Assembly (NCBI RefSeq): GCF_036588685.1
Contig: NC_086375.1
Span: 56,978,001-57,042,000, forward strand
Reading direction: 5' to 3'
DNA: 64,000 nucleotides
Source of the DNA: Mytilus trossulus
Lineage: Eukaryota
The notes under the pieces: model-generated
Database searches by the model: none
The model's input: the letters and a program-made list of their open reading frames with translations, nothing else
Told to the model about the DNA's origin: nothing
Program-made: the position numbers and the translations under genes
Shown: in pieces, positions 11,501-23,500 of the stretch
Layout: every line of letters starts with the position of its first letter
Position numbering within the stretch: the stretch's first letter is position 1

Positions 11501-14500
11501 GTATGAATGGACTTGCTTCCCTGGAAAGAAAACTGAGATTGTGTTTTACAGTACAAAAGTTATGAGACACAAATCAGACATATGTTTACTACTACAGGGA
11601 TCAATGGTGAGGTCTGACTGACCTGTCCATAGTAAATGTAAATGACTCCCACCTTCACCCCAAGTCCATGATGTCTAAGTTTGGAATAAAATGACAGGTG
11701 GTAGGGTCTAGAAAAGTGATATGCATATGTGTGGCTTATGAGATTGACCTTGTATGTCATTCAATCTTTTTGAAATGAAAAACAGGAATGAATATGGTTT
11801 AGGCATTGGTATCTAAATCTTTTACAAGTTCTCAAAACACACACAAGAGGGTGTGGGGTGACCCTAGGGACTACCCCTTTTTTTCATTTGATTTTTTATA
11901 TTGTCCCATACATGAATATACATAGTTGATGGGTGGGGATCTCGACCGTTATCAAGTTTTCAAACAGGAGGGGTGGGGATCTGGACCGTTATCAAGTTTT
12001 CAAATAGGAGGGGTGGGGACCCCCATGACTTCCCCTATATTTCATTTGATTTGTTATATTGTCCAATACATGAATATATATTGTTGAGGGTGGGGATCTC
12101 ATCTGTTTCTAAGTATCAAACAGAAGTGGGTAGGGTGACCCTAAGGACTCTCCCTATATTTCATTTGATTAGTTCTCACACATGAATATATATGGTTTAA
12201 TTTAAAGGTGGGGATCTCAACTGTTTCCAATTTCTCAATCAGATGACTGCAGGGACTCCCCCAAAATTTCATTTAATTTAGACTGACCTATCAAAATTGA
12301 GAAGAAAAAAAAAACCCTTGAAATTGCAGTAATATGTTTAATTTGAAAAGAATTTAACATGCATTACAAACATTTAACACTGATAAAAAAAATTATACTG
12401 TTACCAGGAACATATATATTGTTAGATAAACTGTTCCCAGCTGTCACTTGTATTGGATTTTGACATTAAAGTTGGTGTACAAAATAATTTCTGCTTTTCT
12501 TTCTTTTAAACAATTTTGGTTTTCAATTCTTATGTTTATATTTATTTACCATGCGTAGCTGTATTTTGTCACCTGTCTGGATTTTTTTAGTTGATAGCCC
12601 CAAAACCCCGATTACCCTTATCCGCTTCCGGAATCGAATCCGATATTGTAATCTCACGGCAGCCATTTTGTATACAATGTTGTTTTTGACAGAAAGTGAG
12701 ATATGATTTTACTTGGATTTACACATTATTTATCAGCGATTTTCTGTATAAAGCTAGCGTATCAAATTGAACATCGCTGTCATGAATAGTAATGATGAAA
12801 ATAAGTTTGAGATCGTTTTTTAGGAAACTTTGGTAAAAATGTTTGCAAAGTTATTTTTTTATTTTCTTTCAACTCAAGGTCCGTCGGTCATCGTAGCTAG
12901 TAATTAAGTAGAAAGTCTGACTGCAAAAGTGGAAGGTCACAGACCCTAGACCACAGCTAATTTGAACCCCTGCGTCCAAATTAAAAAGATTCGAAAATTT
13001 CGTCTTCTAATTCAAAATTGCAGCCAATAGCGTGATCAGTTGAACTTATATATGAAGTTGACTACGTATTGACGACAAACAATATTCCTACGAAATCTTA
13101 ACTCCTTGTCTTTAGAGATTTTCGGCGATTAAATATTTCATACATTTGTTCTTTGACATCTTAGCCAAAAGCTCAACAGTCAGGGTTAGGATGGAAATCC
13201 ATCCAAACTTAAGATTTAGGTATTTGGATGGATATTCCATCCAAAAGAAAAAGGATGGACTTACCATCCATTTGTTTAACAGTTTTAATGGATGGCTTTC
13301 CCTTCCAATTAGAAGATATATGTTTGATGGATAAACCATCCATTTTTTTTCCCTCTGTGCTTGAAAATAGTAGTATACATCTTACACAAATTCAGCAGTT
13401 AGAAATGAATACAGAGAGGATCATCAAGATTGAATGGTCAATAAAAGGATACCATGCTTTTCGGATAAAGCCTCACTCACAAATTGAGTTAGATGTGTTG
13501 CCCGAGGAAGGAAATCCTTTCAGCCAATATGCAACAAAGGTAGTAATGCCACTGCTTCAAGAGATTTCTCCAGATCTTCACAATGTTTCAACCGACATGA
13601 GAGAAGAAAACCACCAAAGGGGACAGCTTATGAAAGATATTGCAGGTTTGTTCATGTTGTTGTTACTCTATTTATATAGTTCATGTACTTTACCATGTTT
13701 ACATTTACCTTGGTTAAAATTTTACTGACACCTACTCATGACAATGTGTCCCCTAAACATGCTAAATGAGGCTAAGTTATACATGTTATATATTCTTTTA
13801 GTCATTTATATATAATAAACACTTTGCAAATTAAAAAGGATTAACCAGTTTTTATCAAAGCTTGGGTAGCTCAATAAAGTCAGTCAGAACATCAGAAATC
13901 TATTATTTTTCTTTTTTTTTGCACAGGAAAACAAGTGGGGAGAGTTCCTGCAAATCTTTGCACAGCTTTCAGAAATATGATTTCTCGGAACACTATCAGA
14001 TGCATTAAGTGTAAAGTCACAGGACCACCAAGACTCTCAGCAAATCCACCATCAAACCAACGATACCGGTCAAACAATAGAGGTCATGACAGACCAGGTG
14101 GGGGAGCAGACATTCCTTGTTCTTATTATTTGCATATACGTGACCGGATGTTTGCAGATACAATGCATATTCTTGAAGACTGTGTACCTCTTAGGGAACT
14201 TGATGAAAGAGTACACGCATGAACATCATGTAAACAAATTTATTGATATCAATTCATACAGCAAGTTCAAAACAACAAGCATTTGTATTCTTAATCATGT
14301 ATGATACACAACATATTATGTAATCATGTTAGATATGTAATATTTTTTTAATATGTATATAAAAATACAACAATATGAAGAAAACATACCCCCACTGTAA
14401 GGATCACCAAACTTTTATAGAATTTGATAATAATCCAAAAATAATCAGAGCATGAAAATTAAACTTGGTAAAAATGGAAGAGACTACTGCAGCATTCATT

Positions 14501-17500
14501 TATAATTCTTTATTTCTCGAATGTCTAGTTGCATTGTTTTTACATAGAATGTCTTCTTAACTTGTAAATAGACATTTGTTGCTCTCCTTAAAATTTATAT
14601 ATATACATATCATTAAATCAAATCAATACAGTTTTACATTCCCAAACACAATCATAATACATGTACTGGTGCGTGGATCCTTAAATTAACATGTTTATTT
14701 TCTTTTCTTAACACTTTAAATACTGTATGAAAAGCAGGGTGAAAACAAAACAAGTACATGATGAATATTAACAGTAGTAAACATTGTGATTAAGTACAAC
14801 ATATGAATATTAGGATAATCCCAAAGTAAGAATTGGGTGGAGCATATAGAAAATAAATTTATCAAAAATATTGTACACACAGTAAAACAAGTAAACAATG
14901 TAAAGTAAAAAACAGTTATCAAAATACATGAAAATCATAGTAATTCAAACAAATGTAAACAAATTTATCAAAATACATGTAGTTTATAACAAATGCAAAA
15001 TCAAAAACATGGTAAATGGAGGAAGATTATAATATAAACAGCAAATTTGGTACTTCAATCATAAATGAATATGACAATCACATTTATTCAGTACATAAAA
15101 TACAAATTAAAATATAAAATTGACATCATTGTACAAATGTCTCTTTTGTGATCATGACGTTATCAGACTACAACAAGTTAATTCAAGACAATGTGATTTT
15201 TTATTTGAGAGGACTTTTACTCATTATGCTTAAAGTAAGATTAAAACATCATAAACAATTTTTGCAAATACTGCCCTCAATATCAACATGATCAATGAAA
15301 TATATACGAGATATGGAATATCACTAGGGTTGATGATGATTGGAACATAAAAGACACAAATTGTAAACATTTAACATTGCAATTTGTAATAATTAACATC
15401 ATGAATGGATGAAAAAAGCCTACACTATCTTGATGTACATAAAAAATGATTATTTGTTTGATTCAGTGCCTTTCTTTCTCCCTCTGCCCTGTCCCCGACC
15501 TCTGCCCCTGCCCCTTGTTTCAACTCTTTCTTTTGGATTAACTCTGTTTTTCCTAACCCATATACGTTTTTTTATATCTGCTATTCTGTCTTTGTCCAAA
15601 GCAATTGCATTTTCACCAGATACAAAAGCTTCTCCCAATTCCTTCCTTTGGGATTCACCTAAGCCTATACCTGGCAAAAATGAGAACTGCTCTGGTGCTT
15701 TCAGGGGAGAAGGTTCTACAGCTTGTTTTTTAACAGTAGATTTGTTCAATTTCAGGAGCAATGATTCTCTTCTTGTCTCTATCATTCCGTCTTTAAAATC
15801 AAGAAGACTCTCATTTTCTTTGAATTTTTTGATGAAATCGTCTGTACCTGTATAGTGGACCTCTCCATTTTCCCTTTTTATTAGGCAGAAGTAAGCTAAT
15901 CTCTCTGCCCCAACTGATGCATTTGTTAACTTGTCAAAAATTTTAAGATTTCGGTCAAAATGCTTCCTTTTTCTATCCTTCTCTCTTCTTTCCATCTGCG
16001 TGGGCGTACCATTTTGTTTGCTCATAAACTTGCCCTTTTGGTTTCTTTTTCTTCCTGTCAAATGACAAGAAGTTAAAAGTGTTATCATTCCATCAAAATG
16101 GTATCATAATTATTTAAAAAGTTTATATAAACAAATGATAAAATGGACAATACATATACATATTAATTTTATACCAGTTTGTTAAGATTGAGTTGTTGTT
16201 TCTACTTATCAAATGTGTTTTTAATAAAGTTATCATCTCTCTAACTTAGTATGTTTTTTTCTAATGAAAAATAAAATAGATTATAGCTACATGTACAACC
16301 AACAGATCTGACAGCTACACAAGGTGTTGGTGTAACCATATAGATCTTGAAATGTAATAATTATTCAAATTGGTACTCAGTTCATTTGCAACACTCATAA
16401 CTAAAAGAAAGTTTAGCGCTTCAATACTGAAAAATTATGTAATCAGTCATGGTTTGCACTATTGTTTAGAACATAAATTGTTGGTTTTCTTGTTTGGAAC
16501 ACATCATTTTGGGGTCTTTCCAGCGTGCTAGGTGGAAGAATCTTTTGCTCCATGTTGAAGGTAGAAGTGACCTATAGCTGTGTACATCATTTGGTCTCTT
16601 GCAGAGAGTTGTCTCATTGGCAATCAGACCACATTCTTTTCATTTTTAAAATATGTACTTACTTGGACTTGGTGTTTTTGAGGTTGATGGCACTTCTTCT
16701 ACTGCATCTAACATAAAGGTTGATGGTGTTGGTATAACTGGACTCAACTCTTCAGGCATTACGTCATCTCCTAAGTCCACCTCATTACTATCAACTATGT
16801 CAATAGAAATCGGCATAATGGTAGATTCTCCTCCTAAAGTATCAACAGCCAAGTCATGAAGAGAAGGTGCATCTAGATCTTCGTCATTTACTGTGTCCAT
16901 AGCTATATTATTTAGGTGGATATCTATAATATTGCCTTCATTTTGTAACCCATCATCTTCTGCAAACACTGTTCATAAAGAAAATAAAAGTACAAAAAGT
17001 CAATAAATGTTTTGTCTCAATTTGTAAACATGACGTTTTCCCTGTTTTAGTATTATGGCTTCTTATATTCATATTGTAGTTGCCATTTATCAGGTTGAGG
17101 AGGGCCCAAGGCACAGAATATGGACATTTATTATAACTGCAATTAATATGATAAACATGATCAATATCTGAGATTTATACTTTACTAGTCATGATAGTGG
17201 CAACATTAATGAAACAGAAAGATGCCATGAATTAAGAACATTTTCATCATAAATTAAATTCAAAAATGTTTAATATTTACTATATATGATAAATTCAAAA
17301 CAGATTGTATTAGACATTGATAAAGAAGTTGAACTTTCGCAATCTTACCTAAATAATTTTCCTGATTTTCTGCTGCAATCACAAGGTTATAAATAGGGTC
17401 ATCAATTCCTTCTGAAAACAGTAAAATTTATTAATCAGCTGATTGAAAAAATGGATCAATTATGCATGCTACAGTCAAATTATTTCTTCTAATTCGAAGA

Positions 17501-20500
17501 TGCAATTATTAGTAATTTTTTAAGCATGCAATCAGGCAACTGTACGTGTACAAAAATCATGCAATTATCAATATTTTGTTCCTTAATAAATAAAGTTGTT
17601 AAATTATCATACAAATGGTAGTGTCATCTAAATTTAAAAAAAAAATAACGTTCATTTCAAAGTTCTCCCTAGATAAAAGAGTCCAGCAAAGTTCTAAAAC
17701 ACATTTAAATTGGTGTCTCGATTTTAACATGGGATAAAATTTAGTGAGCTTTACATACCACACTAGCATTATAAGTTCTCCAACTCTTCATTTAAGAAAT
17801 TACTATCCCCATCTACACTGTCAAGATAAGCAGCAGCAGTTGATATTTCCTCCAAAAACTTTATATGATCCTCCTTCCGAGTGGTTTTACTTCTTATCAT
17901 TTCCCTATATAAATCAAGGAACATGAGCTTATTAATTTCATCAAGATCATCAATTGTATCTAAAATTTTGTTGTCAATCTCTTGAATTGTAAGTGAATCA
18001 ACAGACAAATATTTTTCTCTCTCTGATGGAAGAATGTAGACAGGATGGTGAATGGATGGATCATTTGGTGGTGGCTGATGTAAAAGCATATCCATTATTC
18101 GATAACCTCTCTTTCTATTTGATTCTCTTGTAAAATACAACAGTTCTTGATCTAGAATATCAGCTGAAATTGATGTTAATACTGGTCCATGTTTTTGGTC
18201 ACTTATATAACCAGTTTGTCGAAGGCGTAGTCTCCACTCATTTATAGGAGCTTCTAAATCTGGTTCTTTTCCATGCAAGTCCTCATATACGCTTCCTACA
18301 ATACTGGTTACAGATTTTTTAATCTGTTTCAGTGATTGATTATTTCTACAAGTTGACAACCATACTTTTTCAGTTGGAACACCTCGTTTCAACCATGTCT
18401 TTACAGATTTATTTTCTTCTTCAAGAATGAAGTCAAACCCTTGACCTTTGCTCTTATTCCCTGATTTGGATAGACTACAGTGAGAGGCAAAATGTGTTTT
18501 TAGTTCAACTGGCATTAGCTGATGTACAAAATGATCAAATACTTCAATGTCTTGGTATTTGGGATGGTTCCTTCCATGAAAGAGCTCCTTACTCATAAAT
18601 TTTCCTGCTTGCAGAAGAATGTAATTGTTGCGTCTCACAGCCATTCTTATATTTATGATAGCTTGAGTATACCTACATACCATTTCAAATAGATACAGAT
18701 AATTCGCATTGTCACTTTTTGTCTTTACATATGAAATGTAGTCTTGAGGACTAGGATCATGCTTTTCATGTAGACATTTTTCAACATATGGCTTGACCAA
18801 CTCTAAAATTGTACCTAAATGAAATATCATGATGAGTTGCCATGTCTTGTGGTTGTCAGAACATGCCAATGCTGATTTCTGGGCCTTTTCAGATCTAAAT
18901 CCCATTACCTCAACTAATGATTTCATGCATACATTCCAGTTCAATTCCATAAAGCTCTTCATAAGGTTCATTTCATAATGACCATCACCACAAATAAGGA
19001 ATACCCAATCAAATTCTTGAACATATCGTGATCTTGTATTAGGATGTGCTTTGACTTCATGATCTTCAACATTCTTAATACCTAAAAATCCTTCTTCACA
19101 TTCTAAGCATACAAAGTACTCTTCAACAACTCTTCGTACCAATCCATGCGGAAGCCCATCACAGCAAACGAATGTCCAAAATCTTTTTGGGGTTTCATCA
19201 TCGTCTTTCAAATATTTAGAAATTCTTCCTTTTTTACCAATATGTCGTAGAACTAATACGATGCTGTCAATAGAATTGGGATTTACAAATACAGGATCCA
19301 ACAGACAAATTTCAGCTGGAATGTCATTATGTGAAGATTCAACATGGCTATATTTCTGTGGATTTTCAACAACTGGTTTGGAAATACCATACTCATTGAC
19401 AGTGCTTTTTCTTGAAAAGTGTTTCTGTTTGACACCATCAGTACTTTTAGTAGTCTTTGCTTCTATCAGCGCCTCATGACACTGTGAGCATTTTCTCTTG
19501 TTTTTCTCAAATAAGCAGCCACACCTTGGACATTTTTTATATTTCTGTTCTATCTCTAATTCAACAATAGTTTTGTCCACATGATCCTTCCATAGATTAT
19601 TTTCCTCGTCAAATATAACTTCCTCTGACACTTGTTGGATAGCTAAGTCCAATACATGATACAGTTCATTGTAGTGATTTTGCTTAATATCCGAATAAAA
19701 ATCTGTACTTGTATCTTGACTATCACCTGACTGACACATACTTTCTATAATGTTCTCTTTTCCTTCAGAAGTTATCCACTTTCCTGGTGTTAAACTTTCA
19801 TTCTGTTGAAGGTTTTTGTTTTCTGTTACCTTTATTGCAGCAACATTTGTAATTACAGACATTTTGACCTTATTATTAGCATTTATGTTCCAACTTCTCC
19901 CTATGACCTGTTCATTATCAAAAACGAATATTACATCCCCACTTGGACAATTGGTCTCTCTTCCAATATTTATATCTGAAACAAAATTATATACTGTGGC
20001 ATATTTTGCCCCTGGAATAGCAGTTCCCAAAACATTACAAGCCGTTTTGTTTTTGGTAAAGGAATAAACAACTAAGTTCTGCATAAAAGACCAGGCTCCA
20101 ATGAACTGAGGGTCGCATAAACGATAAATACTTTCAAGTACCGGAATGAAATTTTCTACTTTAATTGTTGTTGTTGTTTTTCCAGTGAGTGCCAAAACAC
20201 ATTGTATAACAAGCTGATCAAACTGATTAATGTACTCATTGATATCGATGCTCTCAAGTGTTTTCAGATTGTTGTAGGGAAAAGACTTTTGATGATTTTG
20301 TATAATATTTTTCATTTCCTGATTAGTATGAACATGTCCAATCATTTTAGCTATACATTCAAGTTTTTCAGATATTTCTAACGAGGAAAATAACTGTAAT
20401 AATTCATCCATAACATTGTCAGTAGAACATCCTGGATTGTTCGAACTGCAAATTTGACAATCAATGGAATGAGCATGGTACTGGTATAGTTTTATATTAA

Positions 20501-23500
20501 CTGTGGTATTGGAGCTTTTTTTCCGAGTAGATCTATATCTAAACAGAATGCTTCTACATGCATTACACAAAAAATCTGGATGAATCAAAGGGTCATCTTC
20601 ATGCAAACAGATATCAAATATATCCATTAGTTCCTGCGTAAATTTAAATTTTCCTACTCTTTTTTTACACTCAGTCTGCCTGCAACAGAGACGGCACAAA
20701 TTTTGAAGCCTTTTTACATGCTCTGAAATAAAAAAAGAATATTATAGGACAGTTGATATCAAGTGAACGCAAAAATTTTGAAGTCATTAATTTGTTTCTG
20801 AATTTATCACAGCTTAAAATTTACACTAAATATAAAAAATAGAAAATGTGGTATGATATCCAAGGATCCAAGATTGTTAATGTCAGCAATTATATATATA
20901 TCCGTATTGCCTTCAATGAAGAGCAAAAGCCCACACCTCATAGCAAGTTAAATTTTAAAAAATACTGGCCATGGCCATCTTATTTCTTCAAAAGAAATAA
21001 CCAATATCATAGATTTAAAACAAACCTTCTGTCTGTAAACTTATAAATTAATAAGAAACTAAGGTCTGGTTTTGTTAAGGGACTAAGGAAAAAAGTATAA
21101 TTGTCTTGGGGCCGGATTCAGAATAAAAGCAAAACTATCATTTGACTATGTAAAATGTAGGATTTTAAAAAAAAAAAAAATTTCGGGACAGACTATATGT
21201 GAACCAAATCTAGTTTAGTTAAAATTCACTACTTAAAATGCCAATAAAACTTAAGGGTCGACGTTTTGAGCATGTTGTTCCATTAAAAAAAATATGGTAC
21301 GCTTACGGAACACCAGTATACTTATTTTATTTCATCCTCCTTCATCAAAGTTCATTATAAACCATTGAATTTATGTATACTGGAGATAAATGGGCAATCA
21401 TTCATGTCAGACTGTTAAATCATGACAATTATGTTCTACATCTAAAATCCATGCGGGGTATTTAAGACATCATGCAAAACATGCAACTTGTACTTTCATT
21501 TGGTTTGGGGTGGGCTACATGCACTGTTTAAAATTCTGTACACAAAAGTAAATCTTAACAATTCTGACAATATCATACACTGAAAATGATAATTCATACT
21601 CACTTTTTAAGTAAAATTGTAAGACATAAATTGTGACAATTATTTGGGTTTCAGTGTGTCATACAATTTTTCTTCAAAATATTGAGGACAGATTATTTAT
21701 TAAAAATATATAGCTTTCAGACATTAAAGCCAAATTTGTATCTGTAACTTTGTGTATCATGTTTATTATCACATGCCTATTCAGAAAATGATCTGATAAG
21801 GACAAAAAACAAAAGTTGTGTTTACCATATGTAATGTAATCTGTTGAAAAAAAGGGATGTCACAGTAAGTCAATTTTTATTTTATTGAACATGTTGAATT
21901 GCTATTTAGTTTATTTATTGCATGTTTTAGTGTGTTATTGCAATATCAGATCCAGAACAGGTGAAACTGTTATATATATATAGAAGGGATAGGCAAAGAA
22001 CCCTTTAAATAAGTGAAATTCCGTTGAAATAAAATTTAAACGTCACGCAAAAAAGGGGGGTCCACCCAATCATGTCAATATAACAGCACATGTGGGTGAA
22101 AGACAACCAACAGAATCGTAAAGCAGACGGATGGAATTTCCATCCACTTTATGTATAAAATAATGGATGGATTTCCCATCCACTATTATTAACAAAGTGG
22201 ATGGATTTTCCATCAAATTTTGTCTATACGCTTTTTTAAAATAGGATGGATTTTCCATCCAAATTTCAACGATCGTTTTCATGTGGCAGAAATGCATCAG
22301 ACGTTCGGTCAACGTTCGGACATTTCCCGTTGATATTTTGGGTCATTAGGCTATTTTATCATTAAATGTATATCTTATGAATGAAAATATGCCTGTTTTT
22401 ATCATGAGGAAATATTTTGAGCTCCACAAATAGCTATATTCTTACCAGGTATGCTCGGATCGTTTTCAGGTTCAGTCGCCATTTTTCCGTGTTATTGTTG
22501 ATACGAAAATCACGTGATCGATGACAAAACCTCGTGATAACCTATGCTATTTTTACCACGGGATTTTCCTCTAAATTAACACCGATATGCAACGTACACG
22601 CTTAAAATATTCGATTTTCTTTAATACGCAGTATTGGATGGATTTAACATCCAAATATGAGGGATGGATTTCCATCCTAACCCTGACTGCTCAATGGATA
22701 ATAAACTACACAAGGATTCATAATGAGCTCTACTTCCTATGGGCAACTTCAAAACTTTTGGGAAAATCAACAATCATTTAAGGTTTTTCTTGTCATATTT
22801 TTTGTAATCCAGAATGAAAAGTATGAAAAAAACTGTCCAATAAGTTATAAATAATAAAGTAGCCAGCAAGATGATAACAATGGCACGTATTTCAGCATTT
22901 ATTGGGTAGCACACAAATCGAGGGTGCTCGCATAAGGCAGCTTAACTGCCTAAAAATGAGAGATATTTTGAATGCATTTTCCTGAAATTTGACCTGTCTT
23001 TAAAGTAAGTTATTTGAATTTTGACAAATGAATGTAGTTAAATGTCAATTATTTAAAACTTGTACTAAGATAAATAATTAATCAACAATCAAAACTAATT
23101 TTAATACCTATGTGATGTGATATCTGATGAAATTTTAAAACCTTGAGATCTATATAAAAATCTGATGACCTGATGGAAAAGATTTGATTAAGTAAGGTAT
23201 TGGTTTTGAATTCCTATTAATAGCCTATACACCTATTAGAAGAGTTCCAACAACATTATATCACATGCAATGAATTAGATAATAGTGTCCAACCTGATGA
23301 CATATTATTTCAACTTTGAAATTTATCAACAACTAAAATAATGCTATACTTCTGTGATTCTCTATCATAATTAACTCAATATAAATCAAGCTTTCTCCTT
23401 CTAAATTAGTGGCACAAAAAAATATACAGGACATTACCTCTAAAAAGTGTGTCAAAGCTTCCCCAGCTGTTGAGGTAGGTGGTGTAGCAAATAATGTAGC

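What the first reader, a model, noticed from the sequence alone, without database searches (positions are those of the whole stretch)
17769..22482. RAG1-type N-terminal zinc domain fused to a non-RAG (Academ/DUF6589-like) catalytic core
Seen: after splicing the protein begins ...[14 protein letters not shown]...[23 protein letters not shown]...H...CQIC. Known: this resembles the RAG1 non-core N-terminus (H..NL..LCRICG...HP..FC..C), also present in Chapaev and molluscan N-RAG-TP transposases. The core, however, reads DN...DGLP...GDGHYEMN...DFILEEENK, the pattern I recognise from Academ transposases, and lacks RAG1 motifs such as GYDEK or a RING finger. Inference: the RAG1-N module was shuffled onto a further transposase class, which bears on how RAG1 was assembled.
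Basis: partly seen in the sequence, partly recalled or inferred. Interest (0 to 1): 0.85.

Follow-up and report, generated by a model that had tools for sequence, protein, structure and literature searches.

The report
RAG1-type zinc finger on mussel transposase
An intact, transcribed and recently mobile 9.5-kb cut-and-paste transposon of a bivalve encodes a transposase that carries the double zinc finger otherwise known from the N-terminus of the immune recombinase RAG1, joined to a catalytic core that shows no detectable kinship to RAG1's own core; so this RAG1 module also lives in a second, widespread transposon lineage.

Summary
A 996-codon gene on the minus strand has exon 1 at 22482-22446 and exon 2 at 20722-17769. 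The splice is seen in transcript-like contigs.

- **N-terminus:** it is a true relative of the RAG1 N-terminal zinc domain (NZD/Chapa). The family profile hits the solved mouse NZD (21WB) at E=9e-9, against ZAD at E=0.6. Pfam RAG1_imp_bd matches 14 of 20 relatives.
- **Core:** the model is an RNase H-fold DDE transposase (pLDDT 83). Best structural matches are P element transposase (Z 11.2), retroviral integrase cores (Z 8-9) and Hermes. RAG1 scores only Z 6. D, D and E are invariant.
- **Family:** the core belongs to the Pfam DUF6589 group, though the window protein itself scores below the cut-off.
- **Mobility:** the gene sits in a 9,513-bp element with perfect 28-bp inverted repeats and 5-bp target duplications. 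Three copies are 99.8-100% identical.

The 'Academ' label is not supported: published Academ duplications are 3-4 or 9-10 bp, and no XPG nuclease or helicase is present. Core homology to Academ and Chapaev could not be tested.

The architecture is old. It occurs in bivalves, an annelid and amphioxus. It is probably the kind described in 2008 as N-RAG-TP in Aplysia. This scan has already reported sister families on other DNA of this genome.

The parts
13177..22689 (-). Whole transposon, 9,513 bp, with the transposase gene on the minus strand
   Evidence: Three copies in the genome are 99.8-99.9% identical over ~9.52 kb and lose similarity exactly at these ends.
13172..13176 (.). Target-site duplication CTCAA (left)
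   Evidence: The same 5 bp flank the other end. The two other copies carry different 5-bp duplications, TTTGT and TTGAA in gene orientation.
22690..22694 (.). Target-site duplication CTCAA (right)
13177..13204 (+). Terminal inverted repeat CAGTCAGGGTTAGGATGGAAATCCATCC (28 bp, perfect)
   Evidence: It contains one GGATGG-N4-CCATCC palindrome.
22662..22689 (-). Terminal inverted repeat, the other arm
13189..13269 (.). Three exact GGATGG-N4/5-CCATCC palindromes at the 3' end of the element (gene orientation). These are candidate transposase-binding sites.
   Evidence: 7 exact sites in the 64-kb window, all inside the element ends, with 0 expected from shuffles.
22129..22260 (.). Three more exact palindromes, inside intron 1 and 430-560 bp from the 5' end of the element
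22446..22482 (-). Coding part of exon 1 ([12 protein letters not shown] plus 1 nt)
   Evidence: The ATG and GT donor are read. The joint 22446|20722 is seen in a contig of run X1 and backed by a loose end in X2.
20723..22445 (-). Intron 1 (1,723 nt, GT..AG)
   Evidence: Depth in X1 and X2 is zero here apart from an unrelated repeat.
17769..20722 (-). Exon 2: the rest of the transposase, ending in stop TAA at 17771-17769. The spliced product is 996 aa.
   Evidence: A 976-aa ORF is open from 20741. It is covered by transcript-like contigs and is intact in 2 of 3 copies.
20448..20720 (-). NZD/Chapa-type double zinc finger. Numbering follows the spliced model: H14, C22-x2-C25, H60-P, C65-x2-C68, H97-x3-C101-x2-C104.
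   Evidence: PF12560 scores 22.3 bits, E=1.1e-4. 21wb_A scores E=6.7e-4 alone and 9.4e-9 with the family profile, with all ligand columns aligned. The AF2 model has pLDDT 88, and its ZFa part superposes on ZAD domains at Z 6.1.
19908..19922 (-). FDNEQ: first catalytic Asp (D281 in the spliced model; D261 in the 976-aa ORF), in strand beta-1 of the model
   Evidence: Invariant in A1, A2 and A6. Model strand 76-87.
19479..19532 (-). CPRCG...CSQC zinc ribbon, inserted in the N-terminal half of the RNase H fold
   Evidence: The four Cys are invariant. There are weak Zn-ribbon and ribosomal zinc-ribbon matches.
19149..19166 (-). CCDGLP: second catalytic Asp (D534 in the spliced model), directly after a model strand
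   Evidence: Invariant. Model strand 330-334.
19044..19109 (-). C-x2-C-x12-H-x4-H finger, 17 residues after the second Asp
   Evidence: All four ligands are invariant across phyla. The model shows a beta-hairpin plus helix.
18966..18989 (-). GDGHYEMN motif, directly after the last core strand
   Evidence: H, E and N are invariant. The corresponding motif FHKEM is present in typical DUF6589 proteins of this genome.
18408..18434 (-). DFILEEENK: probable catalytic Glu (E780 in the spliced model), on a helix after an all-helical insertion domain
   Evidence: D, E and N are invariant. It lies on model helix 576-589, and integrase cores align across model residues 72-620.

Best explanation
Window 13177-22689 is an autonomous cut-and-paste DNA transposon that was mobile very recently.

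**The transposase (996 aa, two coding exons) has two parts.**
1. An N-terminal double zinc finger homologous to the RAG1 NZD / Chapa domain. Its ZFb ligand pattern is the type I pattern (one N-terminal His plus a C-terminal His-Cys-Cys). It lacks the vertebrate H2 helix and has no RING finger.
2. A DDE catalytic core with an RNase H fold. The core carries a zinc ribbon, a C2H2-like finger and a large all-helical insertion domain before the catalytic Glu. The probable triad is D281, D534 and E780.

**Classification of the core.** It is a divergent member of the Pfam DUF6589 group. It has no detectable sequence kinship to the RAG1/Transib core or to Transposase_21-type (CMC) cores.

**Inferred mechanism.**
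- The transposase binds the 28-bp inverted repeats and the subterminal GGATGG-N4/5-CCATCC palindromes.
- It excises the element and reinserts it with staggered cuts 5 bp apart.
- The zinc domain acts as an accessory DNA-, chromatin- or partner-binding module rather than in catalysis, as in RAG1.

**Age of the architecture.** It is not a local accident. It is the conserved layout of a large family found in bivalves, an annelid and amphioxus, and it is probably the kind reported from Aplysia in 2008 as N-RAG-TP.

**Shown:** gene structure, transcription, copies, termini, duplications, NZD homology, RNase H fold and conserved residues. **Inferred:** catalytic roles, DNA-binding sites, the role of the NZD, and identity with N-RAG-TP.
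For: **Mobility**
- Three copies are 99.8-99.9% identical over 9.5 kb, and two have intact ORFs.
- The inverted repeats are 28 bp and perfect. The 5-bp duplications differ between copies: TTGAG, TTTGT and TTGAA.
- There are 7 exact palindromes, found only at the element ends, with 0 expected by chance.

**Expression**
- Spliced contigs in runs X1 and X2 join 22446 to 20722. The exon is covered and the intron is not.

**NZD**
- The A1 profile hits 21wb_A (RAG1 NZD) at E=9.4e-9, with H, CxxC, HP..C..C and H..C..C aligned and a 22-residue gap where mouse RAG1 has extra sequence. ZAD scores only E=0.6.
- The window N-terminus alone scores E=6.7e-4.
- PF12560 matches 14 of 20 members, against 1 of 20 for zf-AD.
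- All 14 PF12560 hits in the genome (up to 49.9 bits) lie just upstream of cores of this same family.
- The Atlas nearest named cluster carries PF12560 (0.91), against 0.78 for zf-AD.
- The model has pLDDT 88, and its ZFa part resembles ZAD, as published for RAG1 NZD (bioRxiv 10.64898/2026.01.24.700457).

**Core**
- The model has pLDDT 82.8 and pTM 0.78.
- VIA-align Z scores: P element transposase 11.2 (345 residues aligned), integrase cores 8-9.3, Hermes 8.6, ISCth4 8.3, RAG1 5.8-6.3.
- D, D and E are invariant in alignments that include Owenia, Branchiostoma and Lytechinus.
- PF20231 scores above its cut-off in relatives P0009, P0020, P0024, P0029 and P0032, at 28.7-37 bits.
- Typical DUF6589 proteins of the genome share the motif order WDN, GDGL, FHKEM, HPKY, DF..E..N.

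**Breadth**
- 4,391 clusters score E<=1e-3.
- Named members come from Mytilus, Saccostrea, Ruditapes, Owenia, Branchiostoma and Lytechinus. PF12560 scores 44 bits in amphioxus.
Against: - The window protein itself is below both Pfam cut-offs: PF12560 22.3 bits against 23.3, and PF20231 16.5 against 27.
- A direct profile of the family does not find the typical DUF6589 ORFs of this genome. hhalign gives only a 100-column, low-probability match. The DUF6589 link therefore rests on the Pfam model alone.
- The structural library does not hold 21WB, so the ZFb half of the NZD was not compared in 3D. I had no model coordinates to check that D, D and E converge.
- Some features recall the CMC/Transib clade: CA..TG termini, a 5-bp duplication, and a CxxC 17 residues after the second D.
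- No Chapaev, Academ or Aplysia N-RAG-TP sequence was available.
Confidence: 0.72

Rival explanations
1. The core is a very divergent member of the CMC/Transib ('CMCT') clade, that is, a Chapaev-type transposon. On this view the NZD/Chapa domain is where the literature already expects it, and no new transposase class is involved.
For: [quoted passage not shown]
- This element has termini CAG...CTG and a 5-bp duplication as in Transib/RAG.
- It has a CxxC 17 residues after D2. The CMC ORFs of this genome have theirs 19 residues after D2.
- It has FHGRNHP before the Glu, and the Glu sits in E-x-x-N-K.
- The NZD followed by a basic GRP/KRK stretch in paralogs matches the layout of Chapaev-1/2 in Additional file 5 of PMC4411706.
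- RAG1 does align over 347 residues at Z 6.3.
Against: - No member of about 40 scanned hits Transposase_21 or the RAG1 core in Pfam.
- The family profiles find no RAG1, BbRAGL or Transib core in the PDB sequences, even at E<=10.
- hhalign against the genome's own CMC transposases matches only the 25-residue finger.
- The P element (Z 11.2) and Hermes (Z 8.6) fit better than RAG1.
- The CxxC belongs to a self-contained C-x2-C-x12-H-x4-H finger that typical DUF6589 proteins lack.
- The first His of H(3)H is not invariant across phyla.
- None of the 46 Transposase_21 loci of the genome carries PF12560.
- There is no RING. The Chapaev3-type N-terminus (FCYICG...WAPH...DCYFC) is unlike this one.
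Confidence: 0.17
2. The core is an Academ-superfamily transposase, as the first reader and earlier reports of this scan wrote.
For:
- DUF6589 is abundant in this bivalve genome, with at least 103 hits.
- DUF6589 is reported as enriched in rust fungi, a group in which Academ is known.
- No direct comparison was possible.
Against: - Published Academ lineages make duplications of 3-4 bp (AcademX) or 9-10 bp (AcademH) and encode an XPG nuclease or a helicase (PMC10045372). This element makes 5-bp duplications.
- Its other ORFs have no Pfam match.
- The genome has only 3 XPG_I hits, none near a DUF6589 locus.
- Long DUF6589 ORFs of the genome carry no helicase or XPG domain.
Confidence: 0.25
3. The N-terminal module is merely a ZAD-like single zinc finger that resembles RAG1 by convergence.
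For: The only solved folds that match the model are ZAD domains: Foldseek TM 0.62, and VIA Z 6.1 over model residues 7-71.
Against: - Sequence searches prefer RAG1 NZD by about 8 orders of magnitude over ZAD.
- The N-terminal His and the C-terminal H-x3-C-x2-C lie outside the ZAD-aligned part. They are conserved and align with the RAG1 ZFb ligands.
- The authors of the solved RAG1 NZD report the same ZAD likeness for RAG1 itself.
Confidence: 0.04

Closest known systems
N-RAG-TP transposon of Aplysia californica (Panchin & Moroz 2008, BBRC 369:818)
   Same: Both are molluscan mobile elements whose protein resembles the N-terminal, non-core part of RAG1 and not its core (as cited in PMC8355894, PMC8374863 and PMC2996935).
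   Different: Neither the paper nor its sequence was available, so identity of the core, the inverted repeats and the duplication length was not tested. This element is from a bivalve, and its ends, splicing and transcription are defined here.
[quoted passage not shown]
   Same: The ligand pattern and order match: H, CxxC, HP..C..C, H..C..C. The similarity is significant in sequence. Like invertebrate RAG1L, this domain lacks helix H2. In paralogs a basic stretch follows the domain.
   Different: There is no RING/E3 domain after it. It is attached to a core with no detectable sequence relation to the RAG1 core. The window copy has CRLCC where others have CRxCG.
Chapaev transposons (Chapa domain; CMC superfamily)
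   Same: Both have an N-terminal Chapa/NZD domain followed by a GRP/KRK-rich stretch, CA..TG termini and short duplications.
   Different: There is no RING finger (Chapaev-1/2_BF, _NV and -4/6/7_HM have one). There is no Transposase_21-type similarity. The Chapaev3-type N-terminal consensus is clearly different. The Chapaev core itself could not be compared.
Pfam DUF6589 (PF20231) proteins
   Same: Several family members pass the curated cut-off. The matched stretches are collinear and cover the second Asp, the H-x-E-M motif, HPKY and DF..E..N.
   Different: The relationship is remote, and the window protein scores 16.5 bits against a cut-off of 27. Typical DUF6589 proteins of this genome have no NZD, no C2H2 finger after D2, and some carry PHD fingers.
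Drosophila P element transposase and Hermes (hAT)
   Same: These are the best structural matches. They share an RNase H fold interrupted by a large helical insertion domain before the catalytic Glu (Z 11.2 and 8.6).
   Different: There is no sequence similarity, no THAP or BED domain, and no GTP-binding signature was seen. The duplication is 5 bp rather than 8 bp.
Academ superfamily
   Same: Both are large DDE transposases that are abundant in marine invertebrates.
   Different: The duplication is 5 bp, against 3-4 or 9-10 bp. No XPG nuclease or helicase is encoded. Core similarity was not testable here.

Membership tests
RAG1 NZD / Chapa domain | Significant sequence similarity to RAG1 residues ~100-220 | tested here: met
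   21wb_A scores E=9.4e-9 with the family profile and 6.7e-4 with the window sequence alone. PF12560 matches 14 of 20 members, best 1.7e-8, and scores up to 49.9 bits in paralogs. The window protein scores 22.3 bits against a cut-off of 23.3.
RAG1 NZD / Chapa domain | Two interleaved zinc sites: ZFa (CxxC + C..C) and ZFb (one N-terminal His + a C-terminal H, C, C) | tested here: inconclusive
   All ligand columns are present, conserved and aligned with RAG1. The geometry was not checked, because no model coordinates were available and 21WB is not in the structure libraries.
RAG1 NZD / Chapa domain | ZFa part has a ZAD-like fold | tested here: met
   The model has pLDDT 88. ZAD domains are the top hits: TM 0.62, and Z 6.1 over 63 residues.
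RAG1 / Transib core | Sequence similarity to the RAG1 catalytic core (PF12940) | tested here: not met
   No PF12940 hit in any member. No core hit to full-length RAG1, BbRAGL or Transib chains at E<=10. No PF12940 hit in the genome.
RAG1 / Transib core | 5-bp target-site duplication | tested here: met
   Three copies carry three different 5-bp duplications.
CMC/Transib (CMCT) clade | [quoted passage not shown] | tested here: inconclusive
   The termini and duplication fit. The CxxC is present 17 residues after D2, but it forms its own C2H2-type finger. The first His of H(3)H is not invariant.
Chapaev (CMC) | Core similar to EnSpm/Transposase_21-type transposases | tested here: not met
   No PF02992 hit. 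hhalign against the genome's CMC ORFs matches only a 25-residue finger.
Chapaev (CMC) | Direct similarity to Repbase Chapaev cores | not testable with these tools
   No Chapaev core sequence was available. Only the N-terminal alignment of PMC4411706 Additional file 5 was held.
Academ | Duplications of 3-4 bp (AcademX) or 9-10 bp (AcademH) | tested here: not met
   5 bp here. The literature values come from PMC10045372.
Academ | Encodes an XPG nuclease or a helicase besides the transposase | tested here: not met
   No such Pfam domain in the transposase or in the element's other ORFs. The genome has only 3 XPG_I hits.
Academ | Transposase similar to Repbase/Dfam Academ proteins | not testable with these tools
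   No Academ sequence or profile was available. The Kojima 2020 paper is not held.
Pfam DUF6589 (PF20231) | Score at or above the gathering cut-off (27 bits) | tested here: inconclusive
   The window protein scores 16.5 bits. Relatives score 28.7-37 bits, and 10 of 20 match at E<=0.01. A direct profile of the family does not find typical DUF6589 ORFs.
DDE / RNase H-like transposase | RNase H fold with acidic residues on strand 1, after strand 4, and on a following helix | tested here: met
   Integrase cores score Z 8-9.3 and the P element 11.2. D281, D534 and E780 are invariant and sit on those elements of the model. Convergence in 3D was not measured.
Cut-and-paste TIR transposon | Terminal inverted repeats, target duplications, multiple near-identical copies at unrelated sites | tested here: met
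N-RAG-TP | Homology to the Aplysia N-RAG-TP protein | not testable with these tools
   The paper (PMC2719772) is not held. No Aplysia protein appeared in the capped searches.

The most novel reading that the evidence does not exclude
The NZD-bearing, DUF6589-type family is a superfamily-level lineage of DDE transposons unrelated to Transib and Chapaev. It has Transib-like 5-bp duplications and is present in both protostomes and deuterostomes. It is therefore a third, overlooked home of the RAG1 NZD. The domain must then have moved between unrelated transposase classes at least once, and this lineage, rather than Chapaev, could be the donor or the sister of the RAG1L N-terminus.
Probability: 0.3. 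Interest if true: 0.75.

Novelty: new member of a known kind. Interest (0 to 1): 0.52.

Why it matters
How RAG1 acquired its N-terminal region is still open. Kapitonov & Koonin (2015) state that the Chapa domain occurs in no transposon outside the Transib/Chapaev group. A 2026 preprint that solved the NZD structure names Chapaev as the only other lineage that consistently retains it.

This element shows a large family that is still mobile and transcribed, found in bivalves, an annelid and amphioxus. It carries a bona fide NZD on a core with no detectable relation to RAG1.

That revives the 2008 N-RAG-TP idea with concrete anatomy: ends, duplication length, splice and catalytic residues. It also offers an intact element in which the role of the NZD in transposition could be tested directly.

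Tried and rejected
**Searches that gave little**
- Foldseek of the 651-residue core against the PDB gave only weak hits to Hermes and the P element (E>0.1). VIA-align was needed.
- The structure libraries do not contain 21WB, so the NZD model could only be matched to ZAD domains.
- hhalign of the family against typical DUF6589 ORFs and against CMC ORFs of the same genome gave low probabilities. An hmmsearch with the family profile found neither group.
- Searching the genome for XPG_I near DUF6589 loci, as a proxy for Academ, found only 3 hits, which I take to be host genes, none near a DUF6589 locus.

**Literature**
- Kojima 2020 (AcademH), Yuan & Wessler 2011, Fugmann 2010 and Panchin & Moroz 2008 are not held.
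- Searches for DUF6589 and PF20231 gave nothing useful.
- I briefly considered that 'Chapaev-3Aca' in the 2026 preprint was an Aplysia element. The figure legend of PMC4411706 gives AC as Anolis carolinensis, so I took 'ACa' to be Anolis too and dropped the idea.
- I considered Chapaev3 as the true identity. I rejected it because its N-terminal consensus is different.

**Tools and limits**
I could not check whether a fungal relative sits next to a helicase.
The ends and duplications of typical DUF6589 elements could not be determined.
- The representative search listed only the best 150 of 4,391 hits, all close kin.
- The joined exon 1 + exon 2 protein was not built or searched. Exon 2 was used by reference, and the 12 codons of exon 1 are too short to search.

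Full report
**1. What is at the coordinates**

The minus strand holds a 976-codon ORF (17769-20699). It stays open upstream to 20741 behind a pyrimidine-rich tract and an AG.
- An ATG at 22482 opens a 37-nt coding stretch ([12 protein letters not shown] plus one base). It ends at a G|GTAAG donor after 22446.
- The acceptor TTTCAG| lies before 20722. It restores the frame as ...[15 protein letters not shown].
- The spliced product would be 996 aa.
- Exon 2 was always used by reference (window:17772-20720:-).

**2. The gene model is backed by transcripts**

I laid two contig sets that behave as RNA, plus two raw RNA runs, on 16800-22700.
- A contig of X1 joins 22446 to 20722, skipping 1723 nt with GT..AG ends on the minus strand.
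- A contig of X2 stops at 20723 with eight loose letters that equal the end of exon 1.
- Both sets cover the exon and leave the intron empty.
- Two further joints, 17759|17411 and 17349|16968, show that the transcript continues. A donor lies 10 nt after the stop codon, and the transcript runs into downstream exons.
- Raw reads were few, and only about 6% of each run was read.

**3. It is a transposon, and a young one**

A six-frame search of the assembly found the same protein at three places. Two copies are intact and one has a TAA stop. More than 50 further matches, at 25-49% identity, include many long open frames.

Alignment of the three loci shows 99.8-99.9% identity over about 9.52 kb, with sharp ends.
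- The element is 13177-22689 (9,513 bp).
- It has perfect 28-bp terminal inverted repeats, CAGTCAGGGTTAGGATGGAAATCCATCC.
- Its 5-bp target duplications differ between copies: TTGAG, TTTGT and TTGAA.
- Seven exact GGATGG-N4/5-CCATCC palindromes occur in the 64-kb window. All lie in the element's ends, and none is expected by chance.
- Sampled 31-letter words of the transposase exon are held by runs carrying five organism labels.

**4. The N-terminus is a RAG1-type NZD**

Sequence evidence:
- A profile of 20 family members finds, as its best hits among 177,635 PDB sequences, the solved mouse RAG1 NZD (21wb_A, E=9.4e-9) and full-length mouse RAG1. The full-length protein matches only through residues 102-262.
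- The alignment pairs the N-terminal His, the CRxCG, the IDV...IHP..C..C block and the final H..C..C. It opens a 22-residue gap where mouse RAG1 has extra sequence.
- According to the authors of the structure, vertebrate RAG1 has gained helix H2, which invertebrate RAG1L and Chapa domains lack.
- The ZAD of M1BP scores E=0.6 in the same search.
- The window's own 115 residues find 21wb_A first, at E=6.7e-4.
- Pfam RAG1_imp_bd matches 14 of 20 members and zf-AD matches 1 of 20. The window protein scores 22.3 bits against a cut-off of 23.3.

Genome-wide evidence:
- All 14 PF12560 hits in the genome (up to 49.9 bits) lie a few hundred bases upstream of cores of this same family.
- Those paralogs show a textbook pattern followed by a basic RGRPKKRK-like stretch.

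Structural evidence:
- The AlphaFold2 model has pLDDT 88.
- It matches only ZAD domains, over residues 7-71 (TM 0.62, Z 6.1).
- This is the same partial likeness that the NZD authors report for RAG1 itself.
- 21WB is not in the structure libraries, so the ZFb half was not compared in 3D.

There is no RING finger.

**5. The core is a DDE RNase H-fold transposase**

The model of ORF residues 180-830 has pLDDT 82.8 and pTM 0.78. An all-against-representatives structural search gave these matches:

| Match | Z | Aligned residues |
|---|---|---|
| P element transposase | 11.2 | 345 |
| Retroviral integrase catalytic cores | 8-9.3 | ~130, spanning model 72-620 |
| Hermes | 8.6 | 294 |
| ISCth4 | 8.3 | 253 |
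| Tn5, Mos1, Mu | lower | |
| RAG1 | 5.8-6.3 | 336-347 |
| BbRAGL | 5.3 | 348 |

Placement of the acidic residues:
- The invariant Asp of FDNEQ lies in a strand.
- The invariant Asp of CCDGLP follows a strand.
- The invariant Glu of DFILEEENK lies on a helix behind an all-helical insertion domain.

Extra modules are a CPRCG...CSQC zinc ribbon and a C-x2-C-x12-H-x4-H finger 17 residues after the second Asp.

The Glu of GDGHYEMN is also invariant and could be an alternative third residue. I prefer E780 because the integrase alignments run on to model residue ~620.

**6. Which kind of core**

The link to DUF6589:
- Pfam's only core hit is DUF6589. It is sub-threshold for the window protein (16.5 bits).
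- It is above the 27-bit cut-off in five relatives. The matched stretches are collinear.
- Typical DUF6589 ORFs are abundant in the genome, with at least 103 hits. They share the motif order WDN, GDGL, FHKEM, HPKY, DF..E..N.
- They lack the NZD and the C2H2 finger.
- The relation is remote. A direct family profile and hhalign do not recover them.

Against RAG1/Transib and CMC:
- There is no PF12940 or PF02992 hit in about 40 members scanned.
- There is no PDB core hit at E<=10.
- hhalign against the genome's CMC transposases matches only the finger.
- None of the 46 Transposase_21 loci has a PF12560 hit.

Features that keep a distant CMCT relationship alive are CA..TG termini, the 5-bp duplication and the position of the CxxC. 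I give that rival 0.17.

Chapaev3 is excluded by its different N-terminal consensus. The RING-bearing Chapaevs are excluded by the missing RING.

On 'Academ':
- The only published defining features I could read are duplications of 3-4 or 9-10 bp and an accompanying XPG nuclease or helicase.
- Neither is met.
- Core similarity could not be tested for lack of any Academ sequence.

**7. Breadth and age**
- The family profile finds 4,391 clusters at 50% identity (E<=1e-3) and 597 at E<=1e-30.
- Named members come from Mytilus, Saccostrea, Ruditapes, the annelid Owenia, two or three Branchiostoma species and Lytechinus.
- The amphioxus proteins carry PF12560 at 44 bits on the same core.
- D/D/E, the C2H2 finger and the HYEMN motif stay invariant across these phyla.
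- The NZD-plus-core layout is therefore ancient in bilaterians. It is not a recent shuffle in this genome.

**8. Relation to the literature**
- Reviews cite Panchin & Moroz (2008) for N-RAG-TP, an Aplysia element whose protein resembles the RAG1 N-terminus. I could not read that paper.
- Kapitonov & Koonin (2015) state that the Chapa domain is in no other known transposon.
- The 2026 NZD preprint calls Chapaev the only other lineage that consistently retains it. It mentions only 'sporadic' proteins, such as one from Branchiostoma.
- The present family fits the N-RAG-TP description and fills that gap. I file it as a new member of a known kind.
- Other first-stage notes and follow-up reports of this scan describe sister families with the same architecture on other DNA of this genome. 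They are not independent evidence. I do not adopt their 'Academ' wording.

**9. Limits**
- No model coordinates were available.
- No Repbase or Dfam sequences were available.

Noticed in passing
window 16800-17771 (minus strand): The transposase stop codon (17771-17769) is followed 10 nt later by a GT donor. Transcript-like contigs splice 17759 to 17411 and 17349 to 16968. This leads into the acidic 107-aa ORF (16646-16969), which lies upstream of the basic 212-aa ORF (15450-16088). The frame arithmetic would allow exon 1 to be read through exon 17411-17349 into the frame of the 107-aa ORF if the transposase exon is skipped, but I did not translate that 63-nt exon to check that it is open. No such joint was seen.
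   Followed up: partly
window 13228-14222 (plus strand): Two ORFs (166 and 95 aa) lie inside the element and converge on the transposase gene. Another reader called them HIRAN-like. Pfam gives no match at E<=0.1.
   Followed up: partly
protein P0016: A 987-aa member of this animal transposase family is deposited as a protein of a 'Candidatus Thiodiazotropha sp.' MAG, on a 4.6-kb contig. I suspect host DNA binned into a bacterial MAG, since to my knowledge Thiodiazotropha are symbionts of bivalves; I did not check this.
   Followed up: no
G000:C5:46752510-46755437 (L003): The third copy of the element has a single TAA stop inside the transposase ORF. The other two copies are intact.
   Followed up: no
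genome-wide: The genome holds at least 103 DUF6589 matches. They include open frames of 1,816-2,171 aa and 984-999-aa ORFs, one of which has a PHD-finger match. There are also 46 Transposase_21 (CMC) matches. None of these carries a PF12560 hit.
   Followed up: partly
window 17273-17300 and 21165-21183: A 2.8-kb, high-depth contig of run X2 touches two short stretches of the element on the minus strand. This is probably an unrelated repeat that shares a few dozen bases.
   Followed up: no
protein P0189: A 579-aa protein of the glomeromycete fungus Diversispora epigaea matches the N-terminal half of the family profile at E=6.6e-35. This hints that relatives exist outside animals.
   Followed up: partly
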